Shown: positions 12,993-63,179 of the stretch, one piece after another | Numbering within the stretch: the first letter of the stretch is position 1 | How the letters are laid out: each line of letters starts with the position of its first letter | Source of the DNA: Takakia lepidozioides | Lineage: Eukaryota; Plantae; Bryophyta | NCBI GenBank assembly: GCA_030704615.1 | Contig: CM060731.1 | Span: forward strand, 22,630,001-22,694,000 | Length of the DNA: 64,000 nucleotides | Direction: 5' to 3' | Program-made: the position numbers and the translations under genes | Notes under the pieces: generated by a model | What the model was told of the DNA's origin: nothing | The model's database searches: none | What the model saw: only the letters and a program-made list of their open reading frames with translations

Positions 12993-14880
12993 AATTAAAG
13001 GCCTTCTATCACTCTGCTCGATGCTTCTTGAAAAATCATAGCCAAAGCCCTAGCTCGAAGGCTGCAGCCTCTACTTCCTAAAATCATTCGCTCGGTTCAA
13101 ACATGTTTCACCAAAGATTGTATGATCTTAGATAATATTCTCTTTGCATTTGAGGCCTTGAATTATGCGGAAAGTTCTAACCCATCGTTGGCTTTCCTTA
13201 TGCTAGATTTTGAAAAAGCTATTGCTTCTATTGATTGGGAGGTTTTGTCGGGCGCCCTCGTGCCCTCTAGCTCTTTTCTTATTTCTAATTGTGGCCAACT
13301 GTTTGGAGCACCAGCTTGATGCAAGAAATGACATCATTGGTCTCCAACTCTCCCATCCGCACTTTGACTTGCCTCCTAATGTGAAATCATCCACGTATGC
13401 AGATGATACAATGTTGACGCTAGACAATTCCAACCATGAGAATATTGAAAGGGCCCTGTCTGTTCTCAACTCCTTTTGCCTTGCTTTGGGCCTCAAAATG
13501 AATTGGGTAAAGTCAGTGGGCTTGCTATAGAAGCTGCAGGATAATTCTTCTTCTGTGCATTGCACCACCCACTAGAGTACGGAGTTCGGCCTCCGTTAGT
13601 TGGCCAATGGCTCCTCGCACACTCTCCTGGGATTTCCAATTTAGCAACCACCTCACGGAGGAGCAAAGGTTTCAGGGTGTGCTTAAGAAGCTGAAACTGA
13701 AGCTGGTATTTTGGAGTTCGGCGATTATTTCGATTGCCAGGAGAGCTCTAACCCTAAATCAAGTGTTACTGGCTTCCATCTGATATTTTGCAGCTGTTTG
13801 TGCCCCGGGCTCTCAACTCGTCAGTCCATTACGGCGCTTGTGAGGACTTTCTTATGGGGTGCCACTTCTGCTTCTCCGACCCGTAGGGCATTGCTTCCTG
13901 GAAGCAACTGTGCGAAGAATGGGGACTGGGGCTGCTAGACGCAGAAACTCAGATACTGCCCTTTTGGCCAAATAGATCCATTGAGTCTTCTTTCACTTTA
14001 ATAGCCCTTGGAGCAGGCTTATCCCCCCTTACCTGGTGGGTTCCATTCCCAGCTCGTCGCAGAGGTGTGCCCCCTCTCTGCGTTGGATGTTCAAGGAAAA
14101 GGTAAGTGCCTCTCTATCGGTTCCCTAGCGACGTGGAAGTCTTCTTGGAGTGCATGGAGATCCTTGATGCCTCATCTCACTCAAAGAATGCCTTCAATCT
14201 TTGCAGAAGCCATTAGGCAATCAATATTTGAGAATTACAACTTAGATTTGGAGCTGTTGGATTCCTTGAATTCTAAATGGGCTCCTTGGGAGGAGGCTGG
14301 CCTCATGCGCCGGGCAAACATTTTGAGAATGGGGATTTCATTTTGGCTCCCTTGGTATAAGCCTCGTACGTTGGTAAAAGAAGACCCACACTTCTTGGCC
14401 TGTCATTTTGTCGACCCAAATCTCTCCTAACATTCGTCCGTTGCTTTCTGGCGGGCAAGAGCAGTGGCAGCCACGGGCTTGGATGGGTTTTGTCCACCTC
14501 CCCTGTCAAGCCATGATGGTCCTATCTGTGAATGGGCGTCTGCCTCTGGTCTGGTTTCAGGGCCATTCAGACTGGTAAGCTTCTGCTCTACAGTGAGGAT
14601 GGCGTGGCTGTGAAATCAGACTTGTTCCATATCAGGGTCATTGATAACTCATCTGGTGTTCCCAATCCTCTGCATTGGGCCTTACATGCAGACTTTTTCT
14701 GGTTTATCTCCTTTCAATTTACAAGTCCTCCAGTTTGACCCGCGAGAATGGGCATGGATGGATCATATTTGTTAAAGAAAGGAAACCAAAATGACCAGAA
14801 ATGATGGTAAACTGGAAGGATGTCAGGGAGCTCTTCACTGGCGCCTCCACAAGGCTATGAGGATCTCCCTTGAATGGCAC
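12993..14880 (+). mobile_element. Degenerate LINE reverse-transcriptase fragment
   Basis: KIIAKALARRLQPLLPKII, ILDNILFAFEAL, LDFEKA, CPLALFLFLI and YADDT, with stops, frameshifts and an internal deletion. Confidence 0.85.
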
Positions 14881-15089
14881 TTGCCTCTGCATTAAGTCGT
14901 AAATCCCAATTGCCTGCATGAATCCTCCATGGCTCCCATGCATAGGCCGGTATTTCTAGGTCAGTACTTAGTACCATAGGAAATGCCTTAGACCCAAGAC
15001 CAAGAATCTAGCGTGGTTGGTACTGATCATGATTACCTCCATGGAGGTAGTTTGTCACTATTTGCATGAAGATAGGTTAGTGTATTCTT

Positions 15090-15205
15090 ACAACTACCTT
15101 CATGCAAGAAAGATGGACACCTTAGTGACACCAAGGGTGAATTGAACCCACAACCACTTTCGGGGTGGTATGTGCCCATTAGCACTGGGCTACAACTTGG
15201 TTGTC
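15090..15205 (-). mobile_element. tRNA-derived SINE, family 1, partial copy A
   Basis: The minus strand reads GACAACCAAGTTGTAGCCCAGTGCTAATGG (A box) ... GGGTTCAATTC (B box). It is homologous to copies B-D. Confidence 0.7.
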
Positions 15206-15399
15206 AACCTGTGTGTAGGGTTTAGCCAGAGGGCTCCTTATGAGAGCTTGGGCGTTCCTAAACTCATATGTTGTGTCACATGCACTATCGTATGAATGTG
15301 CTACACTGTCCGGCCCGTCCATCCCCCTCCACATATGCGGAGGGCCCGCCACTATAGGCAGACGGTTTTGCAGCGGTGAATCTCACTTGAGATAATTCA

Positions 15400-15556
15400 T
15401 AATATTTGGCACCTCCTGAAAAAAGCGTAAATTATGGTGTGTCTTCACCACGAGGCCTTTCGCTAGGAAGATGAACACGTTTGTGACACCAAGGGTGGAT
15501 TGAACCCATGACCACTTCTGGAGGTGGTATGTGCCCATCGCCATTGGGCGACAACT
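15400..15556 (-). mobile_element. tRNA-derived SINE, family 1, copy B
   Basis: Same body as 18596-18810 and 47913-48091 (GGTTCAATCC B box; GACACACCATAATTTACGCT 3' part). Confidence 0.7.
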
Positions 15557-20541: not shown

Positions 20542-22496
20542 TTAGATGGATTTGCGAACATTTTCGCTCCGAGGATCCGTATTTTCTGGATCATCAAGAG
20601 CTAAAGTGGCACTACTGTGCTTGGATTGGTGGTGCAGCTCATAGTACATCACGTCGACGTAAAACTTCCTAGTGCGGACAATCAGGATGATGCACAAGAT
20701 GCATCCGAAGAGGCACATGCCTGCCATGATGAGAAACGTAAGGCGAAAGCAAGTGGTGCCTGTACACGAAAGTTGATCCCCCGATGGAGTGAATAATTTT
20801 TCAGTAATTTTTGTCATCAATCTGCGTCCAAGCGTTATACTTGGAATCCGATGCGGATTTTGCTTCTGGGCCTCCGTATCGTACAGATATCCAGCAACCC
20901 GCACCGAGAAAAAGTAGGAGCCGACAGGACTGGCCATAGTGACTGCATTGAGCAGTGTCCCAAAATGCCTCAAGCCAAATATCTCAGAAGTTGTAGCAGG
21001 TACCAGTGCCCAGTGAGCTCCAAAGTTCAGGCCGATAACAACAGATCCCATGTAGAGTGAGCCTGGTAGAGCCCATGCCATTATAATGTGCCCGACAGCC
21101 AGACTTAGGTGCGCAAAAAGGAGGAAAACTGGCCTTGGAACTCCCATCTCATGTAAGCAAATCTCGGAGAGAGCTCCAGACCCCAAACGTCCAAGGAAAT
21201 TCCAAATCGATACCAATGACACGAACGTGGTGACCTTGCTCGCTGGGTACCCAAGGGAGGCTCCAATCTGACCAAGATTATCCATGGCTGTGAGCCCAGA
21301 TCCCATCCCAATTCCTGCAATTAAAATGAGAAGCCAGAAATCTACGGTTGCCAGAGCCTGTATTAAATTGTGATCATTTCCTCTGTCGGGGAAATGGCCC
21401 AACCGGCTTAGTCCCCAATCTCCTTCCGATTCGTCCTGCTCTGCGCGAGTTCCATCGACACTGCTTTCAGTCCTTGATGAACTGGCAGTATCAACTATGC
21501 TAACATTTCCGCTTTGATCGTCCCGGCCTTGTAAATCGCCACTTTTTCCAGTGCGCCAATTACTTGCAAATGTGCCATAGTCGCTTAAAGATGGAGCAGA
21601 TTCTGCTGCAGCAATGCTTGTTTTCTCGTCACCCTCGACCTGTAACAATGGTTCCCTCTCTGATGTGCTTGACTTCTGTTGCAAAGTTTCAAGCTGGGAT
21701 GCCACGACCAACCCGAGAGGACAGAGGAGAATGAAAAGGATGACCAAGCACACACACAGGCTGGCTGATACCGAAAAGGCCACTGAATTCTGCACCATAA
21801 TGATGCCCATGAGATAGGCTGCCAAAGTGACTGCGACGATGGAAAGCAAAAGGAAGTAGGGAGATTCTTTTCTGTCTATTCCAATAGTCGGGGCACTGAT
21901 TGGAAATACACCAAACATGAAAACGAGAGAGATGAGAGAAGGAAACCATGAGAGAAATAAAAGGACAGAGGATGGGTTGGAGCCATAGAGTACATGGTGG
22001 ATCTGCGTTAGGATGGCAGCACTCAGACCGATACAACCTTTCATTAACCCAATGACCGTGCCTCGACTCATTGGAAAGTTCTTCACTAAAGACACGATCA
22101 CTGCAGTGATGAAGAAGGTTTGGCCGTTAGAACCCACAAAAAGATACAGTGACATTTGCCACACAGCAGGCCTCGCCACTCGACTGGTCACTGCCAACCA
22201 TGCCATCCCATATCCACTGCTGACCTGCACGGCTCCAACGATAAACACAGCCCAAGTTGGCATGAAATCGTAGAGCAACCCCGAGACCAAACCCACGCTA
22301 CCATCTTGAAAAATGCCAGTGTGTCCAGTGTCTGCTGGTCATACAGTAGTGAGTTTTTTATGGCCCCCGAGTACTCGCTGTACATATATGATGTGCCGCT
22401 AGAGCACATAATCCAGATGCCCACGGCCATCATCATCCACCGATTCCTCATCACCCCCATCATATTGCTAATCCAGGAGCTCCCTGCGCTTTCCAT
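20542..22496 (-). CDS. Nodulin-like / NFD4-like MFS transporter, intronless, with one apparent frameshift near 22300
   Basis: N-terminus NRWMMMAVGIWIMCSSGTSYMYSEYSGAIK...YDQQTLDTLAFFK continues in another frame as VGLVSG...KNFPMSRGTVIGLMKGCIGLSAAI...DFWLL...DNLGQIG...SIWNFLGRL...SEIFGLRHFG...CTGTTCFRLTF. Confidence 0.85.
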
Positions 22497-48091: not shown

Positions 48092-48635
48092 TCAAGAAAC
48101 CCTATTTTAACTAATTCTGGACTTTTGGCTTAAATCCGGACCAAACTTCATATATACTTTAATTAAAATTAATTCAAATGTTAATAATATCATGGTGTAA
48201 TGTGTGATTGAACTTTGTGAAATTACAGGTGATGTCATACTTGCTTCAAAATGTGACATATAAGATGTCCATTTGACATTGAAGTGCTTGTGAAGTTGCA
48301 GTACTGATCAGTTCATTGAACGTCCACTGGGTCGAATGATGTAATATTACATTATGTAATCACGATAAACAAATGTGTCGAATCGAACATGGAATAGACT
48401 CCTACTCTACCATACTCGATATAACTGGATAGTAATTTTGATTGAATCTTCATGTTGACAAGCACAATATTCAGAGACAATGCCATTGGAATGATGTTTT
48501 GGGTGTGAGAAGGGCAGTAAAATATTAAAATAGCTTGAAACATTAGGAAGATGACCTACTAGGGTAGTAAAATAAGGATTGGGGTGTAATTAGATATATT
48601 AAGTGCAGTAAGGTCCAAGTTTGTGGTGAGGAGAA

Positions 48636-48955
48636 GGGTTTAGGGTTTGGATTTAGGGTAGAAAGAGAGAAACAAATATGGAAGACTCACCTCCGTAGAA
48701 TGTAAAAATGTAAGGGGAATTTGATATTCATGTAATCATTATATCATACATATCCAACAAAATTAAAGAAAACATTAAAAGAGAATGATACATTTACAAG
48801 AGGTAACATGGTAGTACAATAAGGTTTGGAGTTTAAGTAGGGTACTGCACTAAGGTTGTTGGTATATGGTAAGAGTAATGGTTTAGGGTGCTAAGGGTAA
48901 GGATTAAGGGAAGGGTAAAGGGAAGGGTAAGGGTTTAGGGTTTGGATTTAGGGTA
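48636..48955 (+). repeat. Degenerate telomere-like TTTAGGG/TAAGGG patches
   Basis: GGGTTTAGGGTTTGGATTTAGGGTAG occurs twice (~48636 and ~48931), plus AAGGGT units. Confidence 0.5.
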
Positions 48956-49072
48956 GAAAAGGACAAAGTTTTTGAAATGATGGGGCAAACTATGGTGCTT
49001 TCATGATATGATTGACCTGGAATCCCACCCTCCACCCTGTTTTTTCAGAACCCTGAAATGTAATGGGGTATT

Positions 49073-50041
49073 TGTCGCGCGGCTTTTACTCACCCATCCC
49101 TTCGCTATCCGAGGCGGAAACTCCAAGATAGAAGAGTTGGAAATCTCTAAGTACTCAGCCCGCGCAGAACAATCAGTCATGACCTACAGCTAGTGTATCA
49201 TGGGGGTGTTTCCTATTTGTTTCCTTTTCCGCATTCATCTTAGCTACCTTACCATTGATAATTAAGTATCAGTTTGCTTCATCAATTTTATCGGTTTCCT
49301 TCACTCCTCCATTCAATCCACAGCTTCACTCAGATCTCTCTACACAGTGTGATTGTATCGTATAAGTATCAGATTATGATTTATCAGGTATCAGGCCGAA
49401 GCCATTGTGTCTCTATTCTCCTCTACAATATCCCTACAGCTTTGCATATAACAAGCATCTACTAATCCTCTTTCCTCCTTCATCGTGCTCACCGACTTCC
49501 GCTCCCGCCTGACTCCCAAGTCCTCCCCGAATAATGATAACCTCCCCTATCATTCCCCGTTCTTCCCTTTATCCTCCTATCCGCGTTCTAACCGTTTCCC
49601 TCTCTAACCGTCGTATGTGAACTAACATGTTCCCTTCACTGGTGTTGTTCCCCACAGTCGTTCCCTGTCCTACTCTTCGTTCCCTATTATCGTGACAGCT
49701 GTGTCAAGCGGTGACTGGCTGTGTTTGGCTGTGTGTTGGCTGTGACTGGCTGTGTGGCTGTGTCTGCTGTGACTGTGGGCTGTGTGGGCTGTGTGGCTGT
49801 GACTGCTGTGTGGGCTGTGTGCTGTGACGGCTGTGTGGGCTGTGACTGTGTGTCGGCTGTGTGGCTGTGTGGCTGTGACGGCTGTGTGGGCTGTGACTGT
49901 GTGGGCTGTGTTGGCTTGTAACCCCCCTCTACAGTGCGCTGCTGTCACCCCTAAGGTTCCTGTTTGTCTCAGTCTGTGCAAAAATTAAGGGTACCCTACA
50001 GATCCCGTATAAGTGTCTAAGTCCCCTACAGTCCTCTAACA
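49073..50041 (-). repeat. 3' LTR (969 bp)
   Basis: TGTCGCGCGG...CTCTAACA, near-identical to 61363-62327. Contains a GCTGTG array at ~49697-49912. Confidence 0.96.
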
Positions 50042-50044
50042 TTA

Positions 50045-50058
50045 CCCCTTCCCCCCTC
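50045..50058 (-). promoter_or_regulatory. Polypurine tract
   Basis: Minus strand GAGGGGGGAAGGGG, 3 nt before the 3' LTR. Confidence 0.9.
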
Positions 50059-50079
50059 AAAAAGCCGTGTCCTCACGGT

Positions 50080-53000
50080 TTACTGTTTCCGAGTAGCAAA
50101 CCTTTGTGAGTGAGCACCTTGTTGACGTTGAGAGTTTCGTGGTGGGCTGTGTGTACGAGCCCGAGGTCTGTCTCTGGTTGATGGAGATGGTTGATCACTA
50201 CCTGGATTCTGGAGGCTGATATCGAGGTAATCTTTCCGGCATAGGAGATCCCCTTTGTTTCTTCTCTTCCATCTGAATTGCATAGTCTTCTCCCATGTCA
50301 AAAGAATTTTGTGAAGAAACAGTTGTATCAGAATCCTCATCGCCTCTCAGGTTTTAATTTTCGAACTTTTTGTGGAATCATCTGGGGCATACAATGCTGT
50401 CCTACCATGTCTGGAAGTTTGCATTTTACAACCTGGTGTAACCGTTGAACAGCAAAATTGGTGTAGACACTGAGCTCCTTGTCTGTCCAGATGAGTGGGG
50501 TACCAATTACTGGTGCGGCGTGCAAGTATTTCCATGCGATATGTCCCTTATAGAAAATGTCATCAAGTCCGAATTTCTGTGTTGACAAATTGTTGCAGGC
50601 TGCTTGAAACCATGAACGAATTTGAGAATCCTTCTGTATCATAACTTTTGGGTCATATAGGTACATATGAGGTGGCACCGAAGGTAATACCCAATGATCT
50701 CCACTGGAGTAAACTTTGAAAGCGTGCTTGCATCTTTTGTTGCTCATGTGGTAACGTATCAGAAAACAAGCAGCGTAGTATAGCCCGCACCCCATGACAA
50801 TACTTGCTATCTCCTTTGGTCTTGGTATAAATGAGTCCATGTACAACCTGGAAAGCAACCAATTCCCTCAACATGGTACCTGCCTCGTGCCAGTATTGTG
50901 CAAAGTGATGATCTTCAATATGTCGATTGTTTGGAAGAACTTTAGTCCTGGTTGCCACTGGCAGCCAAATACGCATGATTTGGTAGTAATGTGCGAATGA
51001 CTGCGGAGGACTAAATTCTTTCCAAGCCAAATCCAACATGATGGGAATTTGGTTGAAGGGCATAATCATAGCCCTACTGTACTCCCTGGCAGCTGGAGTT
51101 TTAGGTGGGTTAAAAGCTGCATTGCCCCATACCTCCGGCTGTGGTGGCTGTGGTGTGGTTGTAGTAACCACAGGTTCAGCTACTGGTACACTGACCTGTT
51201 GTGGTGGTGGTGGTACTGGTTCCTGTACCATTGGCATCTCCTGCACCTCCTGTGAAGACTGAAAAGCCAGAGTTCTGGCTTGCAAATAAAGCCATTAGCT
51301 GTTCCTGAGGGATATAGACTCTTTGGTCGATGTTTGAAGTGAGGTCTTCCACTTGAGTCTGGAGTCCGTCTACATCCTCTTGTAACTCTGCTATCCTACT
51401 ATAGACATTGTCTATAGTAGTTGTGGCAATGTTCTGCACCTGCAGTCTGAGCTCATTCATCTCGCTTTGGGTGAGCTTCCGTGGGCTTTGCCTTCTACTG
51501 GCCCTTGTGCTAACCAGACCTGCATAAGGCTGTTATCCACCAAGCTGCTTGTGGTTCCCCTGAGAGTTTGCTCCTCTCTTAGCTTATACAATTCCAACTG
51601 CTGTTTGTAAAGCCTTCATGCGCTTCGCCTGTGGCTCAACCAATTGCGCATAGGCAGCAAGTAGATTATTGGCTTCTTTCGAAGCCTTGTTACTGACCGC
51701 GATTTCATTTCTATTGGCCACGATGGTTTGTTGCAACTCCACGATGTATTTCTCTTCTCAGCTTCCATCTGCCTGTATTGCTTGAAAGTATCTTCATTGC
51801 GACAGATTGTATTCTTCATATCGACAATGAGCTTCATGTGCTCCACATTCTCTTCTTCTGCCTTCGTACATTTTTCCGCTTGACTGTTTATTTCTTTGTT
51901 GATTGGTCAAGCATAGTTGTAAATGTAGCGCATTGTATCGCCATCCTGTTATGCACTGTCTGCAACTCCGTATGTAGTGCATTCAGTTCTTGCAACTTGC
52001 TTTCATGCTGCACCTGCATTTGGTATAGCTGTTGCTTATGTGCTTCGTGCAACTGGTCTTGCGCGAGGCCTGCCTCAATCAATTGTTGCTTGGCCAATTG
52101 CAAAGCCATTTCTGTATTGGCCAAGTCCTGCTTCATCTTGAGAGTGACCTCTTCATCGACCTTGTTTGCACACTCAGTGGCAAGTCGAGCCTCAAACTCC
52201 TTCCTGAGTTCTTCTTTCAAGGCTGTCAATTGGGTAATTGGAACATGGGTTTTGACATAAGTCCCAACAAATTAAGTGTCCTGCCTATGGAACTCATCAG
52301 CATTGCCTGTTGAGGGTCATCATGGTGAGGTTGCTGCTGTTCCTCCCGATCTTCAACAGTATGATGTCTCACTAACCCATTCAGACCATTGTCCCACCGG
52401 ATTTCTTCCTGAACTACTTCATTTATGACCGGTGCTACAGTGTCATGGCCTTCCGCCTGTGGTACCTCCGACACAGGTGTGTGCATTATATGTACCTCAG
52501 GATTTCTCTTGGGCAACTGTTGCACCTCTGGGATTTCTGTCTCTTGACCAGACCAGAATATTCATAGAGAAGGTCCCTTTCTCTATTTCTGCCACTATCT
52601 GTTCTGTAGTTGGAATATCTATCCCTTCACTTTCCAAATCAATTATTTCGGTTGAGCTGCATGGATAACTTGTGACCTTGTGACAAGTCGTTTCAAGTGG
52701 CTGTTTGGTTGTGATGCAGAAGTAACTTCTTCTCCTCCCTCTCTGAAGGTCCTGCTTCCAGTAATAACATTCTTTTTGTGCTGCTGTGCCCCTTCCTGGT
52801 CATGAGCTTGGGAAACATTATCATGCGGAATCCGTGAAGCCAGTGGATCCGCCACTACAGTCTTTCCCCTTCTCTGCCTCTTAGTCTCGGGTTGTGCTGC
52901 TAGTCCACCCTCACTGTGTGAAGAGCCTTGCTCTTCCATTGCAGTTGTTTCTGGCTCAAACACTCCCATTTCCTTCCTTTCTTGTGCATTAAGTATGCCA

Positions 53001-53825
53001 GAATAAGGATTATTTGAGCAATGATTGGGCCAGACACTATGATAGGAGATTTTGCGGTAGTACCTTGTAATCTTTTCATCTCCTCTACCAGTGCGTTGTA
53101 CATTATGTCCGCCCATGGTACCTCTTGTCCCTTCAAGCCTTTGAGGATTTCCTCTGTGAAGGATCTGCTCAAATATTGTTGGTTCTGTTTCAGGGCAATC
53201 AGAACGTTCAATACTTGGCCTATGTCTTTTAACCCTGGGTACACAGCTTTGGTACAAGCATAACCCTGAGTTTTAAAGAAACTCCCTTCTTGGAATAAAT
53301 CCCCTATTTGCAGTCTTTCCCTGTGTTCCTCCACATACACATGACCTGCTGGCAATCGAAACAATTGCTGGAGGTATAGGGGAGTAATCATTTAATTCAA
53401 CTCCCTTCACCGTTGTTGTTCCTGTCTTTGGCTCAAAGTTCTGCAAAATTGTAACATGTACTGTCTATGGTGTAGTGTCCAATCCATGCTTTGCAATCCT
53501 TCCAATCTCAGCTCCTTCAGTATCTTATCGCCTGTGGGGTAGCCATCGTTTGTTTCTGCAGAATTGTGGTGCTCTTCACCCTGATTTCCTCCATTCCTCT
53601 CACTCTCTTCATCTTAGACTCACAGAACTGCTTTGGCTGTAACAACTGCAGGAATGCCTGTAGTGCACAAAGCAGAAACGTATGGTTGCCGCAGAAAGCT
53701 ATGGGTAATCTCTTGTAAGCCTGCGGGGCTTGCAAGCATTGTTCAAGAAAAAGCTGCTCTTTCGTTTCGTGTCTCTGCCATTGCGTAAGTAATATTGCGA
53801 GCGTATAGTCTGTTAGTTCCTCCAT
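50080..53825 (-). CDS. Extra (env-position) coding region of the LTR element, frameshifted; plant-transposon-associated domain, then coiled coil, then an unknown globular C-terminal domain
   Basis: Overlapping same-sense ORFs tile the interval: 53517-53834, 52900-53391, 52643-53257, 52226-52525, 51888-52229, 51616-51846, 51176-51460, 50653-51285, 50337-50858, 50080-50340. Confidence 0.65.
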
Positions 53826-54296
53826 AGTTTCCAAGTTATAGCATTTATGGCCTGTCCTGTCGAGACGCCCGTTACTCAGAACGACGCCGCCTCTTGCGCT
53901 TAATTTCCCTCCATTTCTTGATCATTTCTCTGGTTTTCTATTGGCTGTATCCGCTGTGACTGGATTTTAACTTTTATCTTCTTTAGTGGACTTTCCCTGT
54001 TGGATAGTCCACTAGGATCACACATGCGACATGAATTCGTTTTTCTGTACTTGCCGTTCGTTCTGTTTCCCTTTTTCGTATTCATTAATGGGCCCGCCTT
54101 TCATCCCTTTTGACGGCCGTTCTTGTCCTCTTTCTTTTTGACACCTGTCCTTGCACTTCATTCTCTGCTGTGTGTCGCACCCTGACCTCCACGTGTCTAT
54201 TTTTAAATAATTTTCCGTTTCTTCTTCCTTCAGCCATTTTCCTGAAGTTTTTTGTGTCCACTTGTCACTGATTCTATGGATCGTGTAACTTTAGTA

Positions 54297-54495
54297 GGCT
54301 GTGTTGAGCTGTGACAGGCTGTGTCATACTGTGTTACGCTGTGATAGGCTGTGTTGCACTGTGGTAAGCTGTGATAGGCTGTGACACGCTGCGGTAGGTT
54401 GTGATACGTGCTGTGCTGTGTTTGGGCTGTGATAGGCTGTGACCTGATGGGCTGTGATAGGCTGTGTTCCTGTGTGCTGTGATAGGCTGTGTCAC
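54297..54495. repeat. Internal tandem array (GCTGTGATAG/GCTGTG)n
   Basis: Repeated GCTGTG cores, the same hexamer as in the LTR arrays. Confidence 0.85.
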
Positions 54496-54605
54496 GTTTG
54501 TTTTGCCCACCCCGGTCATATATACTGGGCCTAGCGACAAGTGTTCCATACTCCGTTCGTAACACTGGTGCAGCCCGTGACTGCTCTTGCGGTTCAACAT
54601 GCAAA

Positions 54606-57600
54606 TCATGCTGCGGGTTTGTCATGGATACCACTGTACCCCTTCAACTTATTTGCATTGACTCTTCCCAGCATTTCTTTGTTAATGGTTTGTAACATGG
54701 CTGTGTTGTTATCATACATCTTTTGTATGACATAAGGTCCTTTCCATGGTGATTTAAGCTTAGAAGCTTGAATCTTTCCTTTCTTCTGCAACCATCGAAC
54801 CAAATCCCCCGCCCGTCTTAAAAAAGTCTTTAACTGCCTTCATCCACTGTTCCTTTCTCTTTCTTCATCTGAATTCTGGTCATATTATCAGCTGCATCAG
54901 CACGTACTTCTTCCCATGGTACAGTCAATTCATGTTTCCTGACCTTGATGGAGTCTTGTAATTCCATTCTTTTTCCCATTCCCCACTCCGTTCTCATGGT
55001 TGGTAACAGGAATTCCACTGGAAGTAAGGCTTCCATACCATAAACTAATTGGATGGTGTATACTTTGTGGTGACTTTATAGAGATCCTGTATGACCACAA
55101 AGCTGTCAGCAGCTTTGTATCCTCAATCCAATCGTCTGTTTGCATTGACTATTCTTAGCCAAGATAGTACATAGTATTTTGTTTGTAGCCCTGTGCCTGT
55201 CCATTACCAACTGTGGGTAATATGTTGTACTTCGTTCTATGCACATCATAAACTCTTTAGTCAATAACTCAATGGTCTCATTCATGAAGTGACTTCCTTG
55301 ATCACTGATAAATTCTAAGGGGACATCCAAATTCGTGTAAGTATTTTCTCGTACAGGAACCTTGCTGTGGACTTGGCTGTGTTGTTCCCTCAAAAGCTTT
55401 AGCTTCACCCACTTTGTGTATAATCATGGCTGTAATTATGTACCTGTGTTTTGTGTATCTTGGATGGTGGATTAATTGGTCCAACAATCTAGTCCCCATT
55501 TCTGAAATGGTTCCCGTAGGCATTGTAGGATGCAAGGCCATTCTTCCCAGATCTCTGCAAAGGTCCTAGCCTCTGACATTCATCACACTTCTGACAATAC
55601 TCATGTACAATCTTTGAACAACGTAGGCCACCAGTATCCTGCGAGTAGTATCTTTCTACTGGTAGTCTCTTCTCCAAAATGACCTCCAGCCACTCCTTTA
55701 TGAACTTCCTCCAAGACTTTATTTACTTCATGGTGGTACAAGAATCGTTTTAGTACCACCATCTGGTCCTAACTTATACATTCTGCTTCCTACCATAGTA
55801 TAAGGGTAACTTTGATAGTCGATTCTCTTCCTCTGCTCCTTACCATAACTAGGTGGGCACTGACCATGAGCAGGTAGTATCTGATTGGCCACTGCCAATC
55901 TAACCATTCATTCTGCAGCGTCCTTGCACCTCCATTACAAAAACTCGCATCAGGGTAACTGATCGTATCCCTCATCCTGTGGGGCGGCCTCTCCTGTTGT
56001 TAGTCGTGACAAATGATCTGCCACAAGATGCAAACGGCCGGTTTTGTAAATAACCTCGGAACTCAACCTCATGCAAGATTATTAACCACCTCGTTCTATC
56101 CTTCCTCTTATCAAGGTTTGTTCACCAGATATATCAGAGCCTGGTGATCCACATAAAACATAAACTTTCTTCCCAATAGGTAATGCCTGAATTTCTTCAC
56201 TGCATGATTCATTGCCAATGCTTCTCTTTCCGTTGTGGCTATAGTTCCTCTCAGCACTGTTCATAAACCACCGGCTAGCATAGTACACAGGTGAATCTAT
56301 TTCCCTGTAAACATTCTGGGCTAACACCACCGCTCCCAACGTTTCTCACCGATCCCAACTACCCATGCTGATCATCGCAGTGAACATGAACTACTACATG
56401 CCAGTGAGGGTTAATCAGCACAGGTGTAGTTGTACTGACAGTGTAAGTTCCTCAAACGCCTGTTGACATTCAGCTGTCCATTGCAAACACTGGCATCTTT
56501 CTTACTTTCTTCAGAAGGGCTGCTCAATGGTGCTGCTATTTGTGCATACCTTTTGACAAATCTTCTATAATAACTGGTTTGCCCCAAGGAACTCCTTAAA
56601 ACTCTTAAACATTCACTGGTGGTGGAGAGACTTTAATGGACTCTGTCTTCCTGGGATCCACAAGGAGTCCCTTCTTACACACAATGTGTCCCAGAAGCAC
56701 CCCTGAGTTCACACAGAAGAGTACACTTCTCTGGGTTCAAGCCCATTACTCTCATCCTGCATCGTCTGGCCAGGCATAACTCCAATTTATGCAAGTGCTC
56801 ATTCTTAGAGCTGTACACACTGAAATCATCCAAAAACACCTGCTGAAATCATCCAGATACTCTTGAAAAGATTCACTTATCACTCTCTGAAAGGTCGCTG
56901 GTGGCATTACAAAGTCCAAAGGGCATGACTTTGTATGCATAAGCCCCCCAGTCTGTGATGAAAGCTGTTTTCTCTTGGTCTTCTTCTGGCCAGCTTGGCA
57001 CTTGATTATAACCACTGACCCTGAAAGGCTGATCCAATCGAATGAGTACATCTCATGGCCTGCCAAGTGTGCTAATACTGCTTCTGTGAATGGCAAAGGG
57101 AAAGGATCTTTCTTCGTACAAGCAGCAGCTTTTTATAGTTCACACATACTCTAGTTTGCCATTCTTCTTGGGACCTATAACAATGGGTGACAACCAAGTT
57201 GTATACTCTATTGGGTATATAAACTTAGCCTCAGCCAACTTCTTTATCTCTTCCCAACCTGCTGTGCGTAGTTGGGATTCATTCTATAGACCTCTCCGGC
57301 TTGATTGGTACTGTACCCTGGTTCCATTCAATTTTATGCTGACGCGACTTCAGGTGGTATCCCTTTTAGATCCTCATAGCTCCAAGCAAATACATCTCTG
57401 TATTTATGAACAAGCTTTTAGCTTCTTCGAAGACTCTGGCTCCAACTACAGCTCCTACTTTCACCATCTCCGGTTCCTCCTGAGTTCCCACATTTATTCT
57501 CACTTCTCTCAACCTGCTCATCAAGCTGTGATTGTCCAACCAGTCACCACTTCATCCTTTAAGCTCACAGTGGCTGGTTCTTCTAGGATTTCTATTCTCC

Positions 57601-58260
57601 CTCCTTTTCTTCATAGAAATGTGGTGTGTAAACAGTTGGTTTCCTCTTCAGTTGGTTGTTGCTGTCACTACACCACAGGCATATACCTCTCAAACAACTT
57701 AGGCTTTCCAGCCGCATCTCTGCAACCTGCTCCCACTCTGGGTGTGCAGCAAATAGGGTAGCTTCCTGCTCCTCATCCAGTCCTCCCCTCCCAGTCATAC
57801 TCTCTGACTCCTCGAGGTCTTCTTGTAGCAGGTAAGCTACTAGATTTCTTTGTGGTAATTTGTATCTTATCTTGCATCCCATTATGCCCAGTTAGAAACT
57901 GAGAATTCCAGTCATGGAATACCCTTGCCTGTTTCAGGCCATACGGACGTCCCAATAATAAGGAGTAAGCCTCCATGACTTCATCCATTTTTAATACATT
58001 TACTGTGATCATAAAGATCATTTTCTGTATCTGTATCTTAACTCCTCTTATTAATCCCAATGGCTGTACACTTCTTTGATCTGCCATTGTTACTGTAAAT
58101 GGGGCTTGTTTCATGTTACTTAGACCAAGCTTCTGCTTTCTTCCTTAATTGGTCTGTCATGATATTTACTACTCCAGAACCACCATCTATCAGTACATCA
58201 GTTAGTTCTGTGCTTCCAATTCTCAATTGGATTACTGGCATAGAATCATCAAAGTCCATG
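54606..58260 (-). pseudogene. pol (protease, RT, RNase H, integrase), many frameshifts
   Basis: Protease LIDGGSGVNI (~58180). RT: KKDPFPLPFTE...AGHEMYSF, MPFGLCNA, FLDD (~56830). RNase H: PVYYASR...AERNYS, VDHQAL. Integrase: GGHFG...GYWWPT...CQKCDECQ, FISDQGSHF, STTYYPQ, WKGPY. Confidence 0.93.
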
Positions 58261-58869
58261 ACTGTTTCTCGCCGCCTTCCGGCTTCACATTATAACTGGT
58301 CACCTTGCTGTTCAGGTCTGTGTTTCCTGTCTCTTGGGCAATTTCGATTGATTGCCTGATACAGCCTGTGCCTACAATAAGGTGCCACACAAATCTAATA
58401 GCTGTCCAATGGTAATTTCTGCTTTGGTCTGACATATTACTTCAGCCAAAGTCTCTCATTACTTTGCATGTCTGCATCTTCTTTTTTTCCTCCTTCCTCA
58501 CTCCCCTCTTTTTCTCCATCCGAATCAGAGGAATCTGCCACCAAATATCTTACTCTTTTGCATTTCCCTTATAGTATCTGCCACTTCCTTGTGCAGTTCC
58601 TTCTCATCTTTCCAAGTCTCTTCATCTTCAAGGCATATCATTGCCACTTCCATTCTCATCTTCTTCCTCTTCTACTGGAGGTATTAGTTTGGCTTTACTT
58701 CTTGTTACTATCATTGTACTTACTTCTGGTACAACACATGGCCTAACCATGTGAGCTGCCACCACTGGGGCCCTCATTCACAGGAGCTCTCATCTCATTC
58801 TGGTGTCTTATCCAGAATGAACAGGCTGCCTTGCGATGTCCTGGCTGATTACAATAGTAACATAGCTCT

Positions 58870-60754
58870 TCACCATTGGGTCCTCGCCCTTGGTCTGGCT
58901 TGGATTATTTCTATAATCGTGATTCCCGGCTGGTAATTCCCCCTTGGATTACCCTGATAGTTGCCTCTGGAATTTCCTTGGTAATTCCCTCTTGGATTAC
59001 CTCTCCCTTCCATGCCATTGTTATAACCACCAGACCTACCATAGTGGTCCTGATCATTGCTTCTTCTTGGCTGGGGCTGCACCTGATGCACCCTCACTTG
59101 CCTAGGTTCTCTTGCAGCTGTCCTTCTGTTGTAGTAAACATTCTCAGTAGAATGGTTATCCATTTTACAGATAGTACAGTGTTTCTCCTTCATGTGGCAT
59201 TCTGTAGTGGTATGGCCTTCATTCTGGCACTTTGCACACCATACACCCTTCCTCCAATGTGTTGCAGCCTCTGTGGCATACTTCTTCAAGATTTCTTCCA
59301 ATCTTTTCTCATAGTTATCCCTCTTCAACTTTTCCTTTCTCTTACTCTTTCTTTTTAGTTCTTGCTCTTCTTCTTCATCTGACTCATCTTCAGAGTCCTC
59401 ATCTTCTTTTTCTCTCTCTCTGAGCATTCCCAATTGCTCAATTCTGTTTGCAGTTTCAAATGCCTCCTCCACTGTATTATGGGGTAACATATCCACTTTC
59501 TTCTGCAACTCTGGTCTTAGTCCACTCACAAACCAAGTCTTCTGTAAACCGGGTGCTGGTACTGCAGCCAGCTTTTTCATCATCAATTCCATCTTCTCCA
59601 TATACTCTTCAACAGTTTCATGCTTCTTCTGCTTCAGCTGTTGTAAACTTCCATACACTTCATCCTCAGTTTTACTTGTCCTGAACCTATTTCGAAATGC
59701 TGTATTCAAGCCATTCCAGGTTAGGAAATGATTATCAGGGAATCTTGCATACCATTCACTTGCTTTCTTGATAAGTGAACAAAGGAAACAGTCTCATCTT
59801 GGCATCATCGCCATTCTCATTGTTCACTATACACATGTGCTCAAATTGGCTAATGTGTACATCGGGATCCCCTTTTCCTGAATATATTGGAAAGGGTGGT
59901 TTTGCCCGTTTTGGTTGTAACGCCATCTGTGGCCCTACCTTCTGCCCACTGACAGGTGCTGGCACCCTTGCTGGTGCTGGTCCTTCTGGACCTGTTGTTT
60001 TTGTGGTGGATCTTCCACCAAGTGGTGGCCTGAGCACTCCCTGCTTCTGGCCCCACGATATTCACAGTATTCCCAGCTTCAGTTGCACTACTTCCCACAC
60101 TCCCTGTCCCCCCAGAGCCAGATCCAGGCAGCCCGCCTGATCCCCTGAGCCGACACCTTCGTTGGCCTGTGATCCAAGTGCTCCACTTGATCCAGGTCCA
60201 ACGGGTTGGGATGTCCTGGTTGTAGTCTCAACCTCAGCTGTTGGGTCTACTTCTTCATATTCTTCCTCTTCCAATTTCTTCTCTCTGTTTTCATCCTCCA
60301 AGTTCTGCCCTTGGGTTTCTTCTTCACTCATGTAACTCAACTGTAATGGTGTTGGAGAGTCTGAACTCTCCGTTGGCTCTGCCACATCCTCTTCTCCTTC
60401 TTCATCTTCTGCTTCAGAAACTGGAGTTCCTGCTTTTGGTGTTCCATGCCAACTCTTATCAAAGATTTCTGTCAAGTCTTTTATCCAAGGATGTACCTCA
60501 GATCTTTCACCTCGTGATTGATCTTCTTCCTGTACCAATTCCCTTAATCTTTCTTGCAAAGAAACAGAAGGAGTGGCATCCAACTCTAGTTCTTCCGGTA
60601 TAGGTGATGCACTTTTTGATCTTGATGGTGTGAGAGGTCCAGATGATTCCCCTATGTCTATTCCTCTCTCCCAAAGATATGGATAATTAGCTTTCAGATA
60701 GCTTTCTCTTTTTGATGAATATCTCTGTCGTCTAGCTTCTCTTTCATCACTCAT
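58870..60754 (-). pseudogene. gag (acidic N-terminus, capsid, zinc knuckles), frameshifted
   Basis: FPIYSGKGDPDVHISQFE, LKQKKHETVEEY, WFVSGLRPEL, CAKCQNEGHTTTEC, CTICKMDNHSTE and RGNYQGN repeats. Confidence 0.9.
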
Positions 60755-60775
60755 GTCCCATGTCTTTCATTTATT

Positions 60776-61340
60776 TTAATGTGGCAATAACCAAAACTCT
60801 CTTCTGTAATATCTCTCGTATATGCCTGGATTTCTTTCAAGCTTCAATGCACCCTTGGCTATACTTGAAGTCTCCGTTACCATATAACCATATGGCAAAC
60901 AAGTCTGAAAAGCTGTTCTTGGTGTGAGTTTGATCCACAAAATATCCTTTGGAATCCAATTCTTTACCAGTACAATCTCTTCATGCATATGAGTATAAAC
61001 ATTCACCTTTCTTTCTTCCCAGCCTTCAAACTCTACTCGTTTAATGGATAGCAACGCTATCACATAAACTAATGTGGTAACCAACGTGCTCTTCCTCTAC
61101 AGGCTACCTGATAAATCTTTATCACTCCTTTCTCCAGACCCCATTCTGGATCAGCATCATGCACTCGTTTAAGAATATTTTCTTTACATCCGTCTGGCAA
61201 TTCCAAGAACCTTTGAAAGAATTGTTTGGACAATCTTTCTTCCTTCGTTCCACAGGGAATTTGATTCACTTCAAATTCTCTAATGGTCCAACCACCATGA
61301 TCCCACCAGATGCCTGTCACATCTGGTTGTTCATGTCCCA
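60776..61340 (-). CDS. Possible extra ORF between PBS and gag (two overlapping frames)
   Basis: ORFs 61069-61470 and 60776-61084 overlap on the element's sense strand and have protein-like composition. No family recognised. Confidence 0.4.
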
Positions 61341-61342
61341 GT

Positions 61343-61360
61343 TCCCCAGTATGGTCGCCA
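61343..61360 (-). promoter_or_regulatory. Primer binding site, tRNA-Arg type
   Basis: Minus strand TGGCGACCATACTGGGGA, 2 nt after the 5' LTR. It resembles the complement of plant tRNA-Arg 3' ends. Confidence 0.75.
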
Positions 61361-61362
61361 AA

Positions 61363-62327
61363 TGTCGCGCGGCTTTTACTCACCCATCCCTTCGCTATCC
61401 GAGGCGGAAACTCCAAGATAGAAGAGTTGGAAATCTCTAAGTACTCAGCCCGCGCAGAACAATCAGTCATGACCTACAACTAGTGTATCATGGGGGTGTT
61501 TCCTATTTGTTTCCTTTTCCGCATTCATCTTAGCTACCTTACCATTGATAATTAAGTATCAGTTTGCTTCATCAATTTATCGGTTTCCTTCACTCCTCCA
61601 TTCAATCCACAGCTTCACTCAGATCTCTCTACACAGTGTGATTGTATCGTATAAGTATCAGATTATGATTTATCAGGTATCAGGCCGAAGCCATTGTGTC
61701 TCTATTCTCCTCTACAATATCCCTACAGCTTTGCATATAACAAGCATCTATTAATCCTCTTTCCTCCTTCATCGTGCTCACCGACTTCCGCTCCCGCCTG
61801 ACTCCCAAGTCCTCCCCGAATAATGATAATAATCCTCCCCGTATCATTCCCCGTTCTTCCCTTTATCCTCCTATCCGCGGTTCTAACCGTTTCCCTCTCT
61901 AACCGTCGTATGTGAACTAACATGTTCCCTTCACTGGTGTTGTTCCCCACAGTCATTCCCTGTCCTACTCTTCATTCCCTATTATCGTGACAGCTGTGTC
62001 AAGCGGTGACTGGCTGTGTTTGGCTGTGTCGGGCTGTGACTGGCTGTGTGGCTGTGCCGGGCTGTGACTGGCTGTGTGGGCTGTGTCTGCTGTGACGACT
62101 GTGACGGGCTGTGTGGGCTGTGTGGGCTGTGACTGCTGTGTGGGCTGTGTGGGCTGTGACGGCTGTGTGGGCTGTGACGACTGTGTCGGGCTGTGTTGGC
62201 TGTGTAACCCCCCTCTACAGTGCGCTGCTGTCACCCCTAAGGTTCCTGTTTGTCTCAGTCTGTGCAAAAATTAAGGGTACCCTACAGATCCCGTATAAGT
62301 GTCTAAGTCCCCTACCGTTCTCTAACA
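61363..62327 (-). repeat. 5' LTR (965 bp)
   Basis: Direct repeat of 49073-50041, with a GCTGTG array at ~61993-62204. Confidence 0.96.
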
Positions 62328-63179
62328 GTATTCAAATGAGATTGTAAACATGAAAGGGAATGTTAGATGGTGCCCTGTAAAGGGCTGTTTTGTCTTTCAA
62401 TGACAATGACCTTAGCGGTCTTGTCCATGTCTTGACATGACATGTATATCTTCCCTCTCTTTCGTGTTGCTCACAAAAAAAAAAAACCACAGAGGGAAAG
62501 AGGGGGTATAAAAAGTTAATAAGAGAGAGGGAAGATATACATGTCATGTCAAGACATGGACAAGACCGCTAAGGTCATTGTCATTGAAAGACAAAACAGC
62601 CCTTTACAGGGCACCATCTAACATTCCCTTTCATGTTTACAATATCATTTGAATACCCCATTACATTTCAGGGTCTCTGAAAAAACAGGGCGGGAGGGTG
62701 GGATTCCAGGTCATTCATATCATGAAAGCACCATAGTATGCATCATCATCTCAAAAATTCATTTCAAACTCATTTCAAAAACCAGATTGCAGGTTTGGTT
62801 TGAAGATGATGTTTTAGAACCAAGATATAAGCAGGATTCTTAAAAAGGAAGAAGAAACAACAGGGTTGAGCCCCCTTAAGCAGGTATAGGCCTAGAATGG
62901 TATTTTAAGGCCTCATAAAATAGTTCTGCCAAGGTGAAAGAGCAGCTCAAAAACCCCTGTTTGTTATCAAGCCATGAAACCAAAATGATATGAGGGCCTT
63001 GAAGAATGTGTGTTATCTATCAAAGCCTATCCTTTTGATCCACCAAGTATCAAGGCAGTCAGAGTAACAACTGCTATTTTGTATCCTTGTACCCTTCATA
63101 GCTTAATTCCTACTCATGCAAATGTAGTTGTAAAAAACCAGAAACAGGGGTAAGGAGAGAAGCAGATCCTCATTGGAGC

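What the first reader, a model, noticed from the sequence alone, without database searches (positions are those of the whole stretch)
50080..54495. LTR retrotransposon carries a large extra gene preceded by a motif array shared with its LTRs: candidate accessory or anti-silencing module
Seen: ~4.5 kb lies between the end of integrase (54606) and the PPT. It starts with a (CACAGC)n-based array (54297-54495), then TTATTTAAAA (54201-54210) and CACGTG (54190-54195). Same-sense ORFs follow and tile ~3.7 kb from ATG 53825 (~1200 aa if they were one frame). The pieces are a block LEGLQSMDW...ITPLYLQQLFRLP...VPWADIMYNAL, a disordered part, a long coiled coil, a Pro/Thr linker and a W/Y/H/C-rich C-terminal domain of ~300 aa that I do not recognise. 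The same CACAGC hexamer forms the arrays in U3 of both LTRs. Known: Athila/Tat/Ogre elements carry extra ORFs (PMD/Transposase_28-like), and VANDAL DNA transposons encode VANC proteins that bind tandem motif arrays in their own non-coding DNA to counter silencing. Inference: this may be a separately promoted accessory gene whose product, or a host factor, acts on the CACAGC arrays.
Basis: partly seen in the sequence, partly recalled or inferred. Interest (0 to 1): 0.8.

Follow-up and report, generated by a model that had tools for sequence, protein, structure and literature searches.

The report
Broken accessory gene in plant retrotransposon
A plant Ty3/gypsy retrotransposon carries, after its integrase, a decayed copy of a large accessory gene of a type already known from Athila-like elements, and the shared CACAGC repeat arrays are real but nothing yet shows the protein acts on them.

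Summary
A 13.3-kb minus-strand Ty3/gypsy LTR retrotransposon (49073-62327, TSD AATAC) has about 4.5 kb between the integrase stop (54606) and the PPT. CACAGC occurs 15 times at 54298-54491 and 20-21 times in each LTR, and is clustered nowhere else in the window.

From 53825 to 50341 the sense strand is clearly a broken coding sequence: 14 stop-free segments against 35.4±3.9 in shuffles (0 of 300 reach it). Here it is a pseudogene. The N-terminal block is not orphan. Its only relative among 1.84 billion proteins is a Selaginella moellendorffii protein (E 2e-7) that matches Pfam Transposase_32 and has the same layout of N-domain, proline-rich linker and long coiled coil. Sense 3' extra ORFs with this domain are published for Athila elements. 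The roughly 260-aa C-terminal domain remains unassigned.

The 471-nt spacer with the TATA-like and CACGTG motifs shows no coding signal, so a separate ORF start near 53825 is possible. Other first readers of this scan noted the same family elsewhere in this genome, some with intact ORFs. I read it as a new variant of a known kind, of moderate interest.

The parts
61363..62327 (-). 5' LTR (TG...CA); U3 holds the CACAGC array at 61993-62204
49073..50041 (-). 3' LTR; U3 holds the CACAGC array at 49698-49910
   Evidence: outside the array the LTRs differ by 9 substitutions and 3 indels in 767 columns
62328..62332 (-). Target-site duplication AATAC (its partner is at 49068-49072)
   Evidence: with the element removed, the joined flanks match the opposite arm of a foldback at 96% over 234 bp
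61343..61360 (-). PBS-like sequence starting TGG, 2 nt after the LTR; tRNA type not determined
   Evidence: no tRNA gene in the window
59794..61342 (-). 1.5-kb leader with a sense coding signal and no Pfam match (5' extra ORF or gag N-terminal extension)
   Evidence: 7 stop-free segments against 23.0 +/- 3.2 in shuffles; no Pfam hits
58873..59793 (-). gag, one unbroken 307-aa frame
   Evidence: Retrotrans_gag E 4e-12, Ty3_capsid E 5e-7
54609..58872 (-). pol (PR-RT-RNase H-integrase), shattered into about 31 stop-free segments
   Evidence: RVT_1, RT_RNaseH and Integrase_H2C2 hits in that order; segment counts
54298..54491 (-). Internal CACAGC array: 15 copies, mostly pairs 10 nt apart, repeated every 25-30 nt
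53826..54297 (-). Purine-rich spacer with the TATA-like string (54210-54201) and CACGTG (54195-54190); no coding signal in this copy
   Evidence: 5 segments against 6.3 +/- 1.4 in shuffles, 85/300 reach it; sequence
52903..53825 (-). Leader plus Transposase_32-like N-terminal domain (about 53545-53010), read across two frame breaks
   Evidence: phmmer hit to P0001, E 2.1e-7; BLASTP 32% over 96-100 aa; collinear short matches of the two upstream pieces; P0001 against PF20167, E 2.6e-9
52272..52902 (-). Charged region with a basic KRQRRGK-type stretch, apparently disordered
   Evidence: coding signal 4 segments against 8.7 +/- 1.9
51300..52271 (-). Coiled-coil region, about 300 aa across several frame breaks
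   Evidence: heptad scan; weak Pfam hits to coiled-coil families only; 5 segments against 13.2 +/- 2.4
51130..51299 (-). Pro/Thr-rich linker
   Evidence: translation
50341..51129 (-). C-terminal domain of about 260 aa, rich in W/Y/H/C, with one frame break inside 50656-50867; no detectable relatives
   Evidence: 3 segments against 10.7 +/- 2.1, 0/500; blank in Pfam, the 213-aa piece in the word search, and the 176-aa piece in Atlas, PDB, viral and metagenome scans
50083..50340 (-). Tail after the stop at 50340; open in another frame but not distinguishable from chance
50045..50058 (-). Polypurine tract

Best explanation
This is a decayed copy of a non-chromovirus-like Ty3/gypsy LTR retrotransposon. 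Besides gag and pol, its family carries a large sense-strand 3' accessory ORF of the kind known from Athila/OTA elements.

Shown: the encoded protein had a Transposase_32-like ('Athila-domain'-like) N-terminal domain, a charged linker, a coiled coil of about 300 aa, a Pro/Thr linker and a C-terminal domain of about 260 aa of unknown type. In this copy it is a pseudogene.

Inferred: in intact relatives the protein is an oligomerising accessory factor (through the coiled coil) that serves the element's own life cycle. It would be made from the LTR promoter through a spliced or read-through subgenomic message, as shown for other plant 3' sense aORFs, rather than from a proven promoter of its own. 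The basic stretches hint at a nuclear location.

The CACAGC arrays are fast-changing tandem repeats of common origin in U3 and in the pol-3'LTR spacer. They most likely act, if at all, as clustered sites for a sequence-specific host factor. That the element's own protein reads them is possible but unsupported.
For: - Element anatomy and exact borders.
- gag, RT, RNase H and integrase in Ty3/gypsy order.
- Sense-strand coding signal over 53825-50341 (14 against 35.4 +/- 3.9 segments, 0/300) and in every sub-block.
- Break density is no higher than in pol (3.7 against 7.0 per kb).
- The only relative in 1.84 billion representatives is P0001 (Selaginella moellendorffii, E 2.1e-7), which matches PF20167 (E 2.6e-9) and has the same N-domain, P-rich linker and coiled-coil order. 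Three pieces across two frame breaks align collinearly to it.
- Atlas feature neighbours include clusters carrying PF20167 and PF03078.
- Literature: a sunflower Athila 3' aORF(+) carries Transposase_32 and an NLS (PMC11728184). ATHILA 'Athila domain' proteins are modelled as coiled-coil pentamers (PMC13547354). OTA elements typically have eORFs and tandem arrays (PMC6317226, PMC11963269). A plant sense 3' aORF (barley Bagy2) is expressed by splicing (PMC7264820).
- Array differences between the two LTRs are concentrated in the array (18 of 27 substitutions, 9 of 12 indel runs).
Against: - None of this window's pieces hits PF20167, PF03078, PF10536 or PF04195 directly, even at E<=10. The family link is transitive and rests on one protein whose own Pfam score (34-38 bits) is below the gathering cut-off of 45.
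- The element's lineage (Athila or other) was not placed by an RT tree.
- P0001 itself lies as a single exon between host genes with no pol nearby, so the domain is not exclusive to retrotransposons.
- No RNA, sister-copy or selection data could be obtained.
- The C-terminal domain is unexplained, and both AlphaFold models were useless (pLDDT 35-36).
Confidence: 0.6

Rival explanations
1. One reading: a separately promoted accessory gene whose product binds the CACAGC arrays in U3 and upstream of itself to counter silencing or to autoregulate, by analogy with VANC.
For: Dense arrays of one motif, all in one orientation, lie in non-coding parts of the element and nowhere else in the window. They change quickly between the two LTRs, like VANC targets (PMC5735166). 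The 471-nt spacer between the array and ATG 53825 has no coding signal, which fits a 5' region. VANC and Athila-domain proteins are both modelled as coiled-coil oligomers (PMC13547354).
Against: There is no homology to VANC, PMD or DUF1985 and no recognisable DNA-binding domain. The promoter evidence is a TATA-like string in A-rich sequence, with the G-box on the wrong side. No TSS, binding or methylation data exist. Shared arrays in U3 and the pol-3'LTR region are common in OTA elements without any such protein known (PMC6317226, PMC11963269).
Confidence: 0.07
2. In intact relatives the region is one giant ORF that starts at or overlaps the end of integrase (an ATG at 54625 overlaps the last pol codons). 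In that case the CACAGC array is translated as a repeat peptide and is not a promoter element.
For: Stop-free sense segments tile the whole stretch from integrase to near the PPT without a gap, and one frame is open from 54643 to 54233. Unchecked notes from other first readers on other copies in this genome describe integrase running into extra ORFs of about 1,080 to 1,570 codons, one of them through a translated 30-bp repeat (s1-476999, s1-477190, s1-460754).
Against: The repeat unit has no stop in any frame, so openness across the array says nothing. Part of the array has a 25-nt period, which is not a multiple of 3. The spacer 54296-53826 is not more open than shuffles (85/300). P0001 has a leader of only about 100 aa before the domain, matching a start near 53825-53921.
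Confidence: 0.2
3. The extra region is a host gene captured by this retrotransposon family (transduction), not an evolved accessory gene.
For: The only detectable relative is a stand-alone, intronless gene in Selaginella, flanked by MutS and WD40 genes with no pol next to it. Transduced genes are usually in the sense orientation (PMC7264820).
Against: Identity is only 31-32% over about 100 aa, and there is no match for the C-terminal domain. Other readers' notes report the ORF in many copies of the family. Captures are typically confined to one or a few copies (PMC7264820). The Selaginella gene may itself be a domesticated or orphaned TE ORF, since PF20167 is a retrotransposon-related family.
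Confidence: 0.1
4. The frame breaks are assembly indel errors and the gene is intact in the real genome.
For: The two LTRs differ by single-base indels, one or two of them in short homopolymers. The break density in the ORF (about 3.7 per kb) is of the order of the LTR indel density.
Against: A host PPR-DYW gene in the same window reads 979 codons without a break, and gag reads 307, so the assembly is not riddled with indels.
Confidence: 0.1

Closest known systems
Sense 3' additional ORFs (aORF-3S / eORF-3'F, 'env-like') of Athila and other OTA Ty3/gypsy elements, e.g. the sunflower Athila 14 3' aORF(+) with Transposase_32 (PMC11728184, PMC7264820, PMC6317226)
   Same: Position between integrase and the PPT. 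Sense orientation. An N-terminal Transposase_32-like domain (by a transitive link). Basic NLS-like stretches. A coiled coil. A 5-bp TSD. No chromodomain detected. Tandem arrays in non-coding parts.
   Different: Much longer (about 1,160 codons or more, against 487 aa). It carries an extra, unassigned C-terminal domain of about 260 aa. It does not reach the Pfam threshold directly. The lineage has not been placed by phylogeny. Transmembrane segments are uncertain.
Selaginella moellendorffii SELMODRAFT_449078 / LOC9640825 (P0001/P0002), a PF20167 protein
   Same: The only sequence relative found. Same order of N-domain, proline-rich linker and long coiled coil.
   Different: 663 aa with no C-terminal domain. 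A stand-alone single-exon gene between host genes, not inside an LTR element. Only 31-32% identical.
ATHILA 'Athila domain' (PF03078) accessory proteins of Arabidopsis, modelled as coiled-coil pentamers (PMC13547354)
   Same: A poorly characterised TE accessory protein that combines a TE-specific globular domain with an extended coiled coil.
   Different: No direct sequence match here. The only link is that PF03078 is described as related to PF20167 (PMC11728184) and appears among Atlas feature neighbours.
VANC anti-silencing proteins of VANDAL DNA transposons and their motif arrays (PMC5735166, PMC10398659)
   Same: Dense, same-orientation, fast-evolving tandem arrays of a short motif in non-coding DNA of the element that also encodes an accessory protein.
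   Different: A different class of element. No homology. No evidence of DNA binding or demethylation. One of the arrays may lie inside coding sequence in relatives.
[quoted passage not shown]
   Same: Arrays sit in the same two places in the element and vary between copies.
   Different: Here the internal and U3 arrays share one core motif ([A/T]CACAGC[C]), although their unit lengths differ (about 9 nt against 10+15-20 nt).

Membership tests
Ty3/gypsy LTR retrotransposon | Two LTRs with TG...CA ends, a 5-bp TSD, a PBS and a PPT | tested here: met
   empty-site control
Ty3/gypsy LTR retrotransposon | Domain order gag-PR-RT-RNase H-integrase | tested here: met
   Retrotrans_gag/Ty3_capsid, RVT_1, RT_RNaseH and Integrase_H2C2 (weak) occur in that order on the minus strand. 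The protease was not detected by Pfam.
Transposase_32 / Retrotransp-rel (PF20167) | Pfam match at or above the gathering score (45 bits) | tested here: not met
   No hit at E<=10 for any piece of the window
Transposase_32 / Retrotransp-rel (PF20167) | Significant similarity to a protein that carries the domain, over the domain itself | tested here: inconclusive
   The N-block matches P0001 residues 166-264 (E 2.1e-7 library-wide). P0001 residues 110-266 match PF20167 positions 16-173 at E 2.6e-9, but at 37.6 bits, below 45. A precomputed Pfam list names PF20167 for it. This is a single bridge sequence.
Plant mobile domain (PF10536) / Transposase_28 (PF04195) | Pfam match | tested here: not met
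   No hit at E<=1 to 10
Athila-type env-like sense 3' aORF | [quoted passage not shown] | tested here: met
Athila-type env-like sense 3' aORF | Transmembrane segment(s) | tested here: inconclusive
   Two hydrophobic 19-mers (Kyte-Doolittle means 2.37 and 1.72). The first aligns to a non-hydrophobic part of the domain in P0001. No dedicated predictor was available.
Athila-type env-like sense 3' aORF | Element belongs to the Athila/OTA clade by RT-RH-INT phylogeny; expression by spliced subgenomic RNA | not tested
No Pfam match suggesting an extra RNase H or a chromodomain in the pol pieces that were scanned.
VANC-type anti-silencing system | VANC-homologous protein | tested here: not met
   No Pfam hit of that kind, and the only relative is a PF20167 protein
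VANC-type anti-silencing system | High-density, same-orientation motif arrays in the element's non-coding DNA | tested here: met
   (15, 20 and 21 copies; no other cluster in 64 kb)
VANC-type anti-silencing system | Protein binds the motif and causes loss of methylation | not testable with these tools
   Needs DAP-seq or EMSA and methylomes

The most novel reading that the evidence does not exclude
An LTR retrotransposon family has evolved a cis/trans module. Its large Transposase_32-like coiled-coil protein, perhaps through the unassigned C-terminal domain, would recognise the CACAGC arrays that sit both in U3 and upstream of its own gene. This would give family-specific autoregulation or protection from silencing, as VANC does for VANDAL DNA transposons.
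Probability: 0.07. Interest if true: 0.8.

Novelty: new variant of a known kind. Interest (0 to 1): 0.35.

Why it matters
The functions of the extra ORFs of plant LTR retrotransposons are an open question. This family links a very large sense 3' ORF to the Transposase_32/Athila-domain group in a lineage whose nearest detectable relative is a lycophyte protein. It also adds an unassigned C-terminal domain and pairs the ORF with arrays of a shared motif.

If intact sister copies exist, as other readers' notes say, the family would be a workable system for asking what such proteins do. This particular copy is a pseudogene and adds no functional evidence by itself.

Tried and rejected
- Pfam on all pieces: only weak coiled-coil noise.
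- Word-index protein search with the 213-aa piece (linker plus first half of the C-domain) and with the 163-aa N-block: blank. This tool sees only proteins of similar length.
- Word-index search with P0001: found only itself.
- ESM Atlas: weak leads for the N-block, nothing usable for the 176-aa C-terminal piece.
- AlphaFold2 on the C-terminal piece and on the N-block plus P0001: pLDDT 34.7 and 36.2. Both were unusable, so no fold search was run.
- PDB sequence search: nothing.
- Viral and metagenome contig scans for both domains: nothing.
- BLAST of the element and of its protein pieces against the rest of the window: no second copy.
- Sensitive BLAST of 53800-54650 against the LTR: similarity only at the level of the motif arrays, so there is no evidence that a larger U3 block was duplicated.
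- Bacterial-type promoter and terminator scan: irrelevant.
- Chance ORFs were rejected by the shuffle tests.
- Assembly error as a general cause of the breaks is made unlikely by the intact 979-codon host gene.
The C-terminal domain was therefore never searched without a length filter, and its lack of relatives is not established.
Full report
**Anatomy**

The finding lies inside a minus-strand LTR retrotransposon spanning 49073-62327.
- The LTRs (61363-62327 and 49073-50041) begin TG and end CA and are flanked by a 5-bp duplication, AATAC.
- The borders are confirmed by an internal control. With the element and one AATAC removed, the joined flanks match an inverted copy at 62524-62757 at 96% over 234 bp. 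The element therefore sits in one arm of a foldback repeat.
- Pfam places Retrotrans_gag/Ty3_capsid, RVT_1, RT_RNaseH and an integrase zinc-finger remnant in Ty3/gypsy order.
- Outside the repeat array the LTRs differ by 9 substitutions and 3 indels in 767 columns, so the insertion is fairly young.

**Checking the observation**

CACAGC occurs 15 times in 54298-54491 and 21 and 20 times in the two U3 arrays, always in the sense orientation. No other 250-nt bin in the 64-kb window has 4 or more copies, and about 0.06 are expected. The shared core is slightly longer than the hexamer, [A/T]CACAGC[C]. The unit structures differ: about 9 nt in U3, against pairs 10 nt apart repeated every 25-30 nt internally. 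A sensitive comparison finds no similarity between the internal region and the LTR beyond these motifs. Most LTR-LTR differences fall in the array, so the arrays change quickly.

**Is the 4.5 kb coding?**

I counted the smallest number of stop-free sense segments needed to cross a region and compared that with shuffled sequence and with the antisense strand.

| Region | Sense segments | Shuffles | Shuffles reaching it |
|---|---|---|---|
| 53825-50341 (antisense: 31) | 14 | 35.4 +/- 3.9 | 0/300 |
| Leader plus N-domain | 4 | 13.5 | 0/500 |
| Charged linker | 4 | 8.7 | 6/500 |
| Coiled coil | 5 | 13.2 | 0/500 |
| Linker plus C-domain | 3 | 12.3 | 0/500 |
| Spacer 54296-53826 | 5 | 6.3 +/- 1.4 | 85/300 |
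| Tail 50340-50066 | 2 | 2.9 +/- 1.0 | 101/300 |

The main stretch and each of its blocks are significant. The spacer and the tail are not distinguishable from chance. Openness over the array itself is uninformative because the unit has no stop in any frame.

So a broken ORF of about 1,160 codons from near 53825 to 50341 is well supported. Whether coding once extended up to the integrase end (an ATG at 54625 overlaps the last pol codons) cannot be decided from this copy.

**State of this copy**

The extra ORF carries at least 13 breaks (3.7 per kb). pol is more shattered (31 segments in 4,264 nt, 7.0 per kb), while gag is one intact 307-aa frame. A host PPR-DYW gene in the same window reads 979 codons unbroken, so general assembly indel error is unlikely. 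Pieces were searched separately and only break intervals are reported.

**Relatives**

Pfam finds nothing in any piece, and the word-index search was blank for two pieces. The exhaustive HMMER search with the 163-aa N-block found one protein among 1.84 billion representatives. This is P0001, a 663-aa hypothetical protein of Selaginella moellendorffii, at E 2.1e-7 and 31% identity over 99 aa.

P0001 matches Pfam PF20167 (Transposase_32, also labelled Retrotransp-rel) at E 2.6e-9. That score, 37.6 bits, is below the curated 45. After the domain it has a proline-rich linker and a long coiled coil, the same order as here. The two short pieces upstream of the N-block, in other frames, align collinearly to P0001 residues 85-132; the second of these reaches its score in only 4 of 1,000 shuffles. 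The domain therefore spans about 53545-53010 across two frame breaks. Atlas feature neighbours of the N-block include clusters with PF20167 and PF03078 (ATHILA ORF-1), but at lead level only.

P0001 is encoded by a single exon (L001:5327-7315) between a MutS gene and a WD40 gene, with no pol nearby. The domain therefore also occurs as a stand-alone gene. With two sequences, the direction of transfer (capture or domestication) cannot be told.

The C-terminal domain gave nothing in Pfam, Atlas or PDB or in the viral and metagenome scans, and nothing in the word search of the 213-aa piece that holds its first half. Single-sequence AlphaFold models were unusable. It was never searched without a length filter, so its novelty is not established.

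**Comparison with what is known**

- Sense ORFs between pol and the 3' LTR are a known feature of Athila and other OTA elements, often called env-like, and barley Bagy2 expresses its one from a spliced message (PMC7264820).
- A sunflower Athila 3' aORF(+) carries Transposase_32 and a predicted NLS (PMC11728184).
- A 2026 Arabidopsis atlas describes the 'poorly characterised Athila domain' proteins as forming coiled-coil pentamers in models (PMC13547354).

Against that background this is a new variant of a known kind. It is unusually large, carries an added unassigned C-terminal domain, and has internal and U3 arrays built on one motif.

The VANC analogy (PMC5735166) fits the array pattern only. 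There is no homology, no DNA-binding domain and no functional data.

**Other notes of this scan**

First readers flagged the same family on other DNA of this genome. Several noted the CACAGC echo (s1-479987, s1-479956, s1-462303, s1-467988). Several reported intact extra ORFs of about 1,080-1,570 codons, some continuous with integrase through a translated 30-bp repeat (s1-477190, s1-476999, s1-460754, s1-451924, s1-482141). These notes are unchecked. They gave me the rival reading that the array may be translated, and my test on this copy neither supports nor excludes it.

**Verdict**

- Most likely (0.6): a pseudogenised Athila-type sense 3' accessory ORF with a Transposase_32-like domain and a coiled coil, alongside hypervariable motif arrays of common origin.
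- Anti-silencing or array-binding module: about 0.07.

Interest is 0.35.

Noticed in passing
window 48969-49072 and 62333-62757: The retrotransposon is inserted in one arm of a foldback (inverted repeat). With the element removed, the joined flanks match the other arm at 96% over 234 bp. Telomere-like (TTTAGGG-type) short arrays lie just outside, at 48635-48659 and 48892-48954.
   Followed up: partly
window 59794-61342 (minus strand): The 1.5-kb leader between the PBS and gag has a strong sense coding signal (7 segments against 23 in shuffles), including a 234-aa acidic frame, with no Pfam match. It may be a 5' extra ORF or an N-terminal extension of gag.
   Followed up: partly
window 54609-59793 (minus strand): Decay is uneven. 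gag is one intact 307-aa frame and the extra ORF has about 3.7 breaks per kb, while pol has about 7 per kb. pol may already have been defective when this copy inserted, in which case it was mobilised in trans.
   Followed up: no
window 7092-10031 (minus strand): An intact 979-aa PPR protein with E, E+ and DYW deaminase domains (a host RNA-editing factor type). I used it as a control for assembly quality.
   Followed up: partly
window 20542-22296 (minus strand): A 584-aa ORF with Nodulin-like, NFD4_C and MFS domains, apparently a host transporter gene or exon.
   Followed up: no
L001:5327-7315 and 14447-15430 (Selaginella moellendorffii GL377716.1): The PF20167 coiled-coil gene is a single exon between MutS and WD40 genes. 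Its 3' half is repeated about 9 kb downstream inside a local segmental duplication (WD40, cupin and GH17 repeated), and the public gene range spans both.
   Followed up: partly
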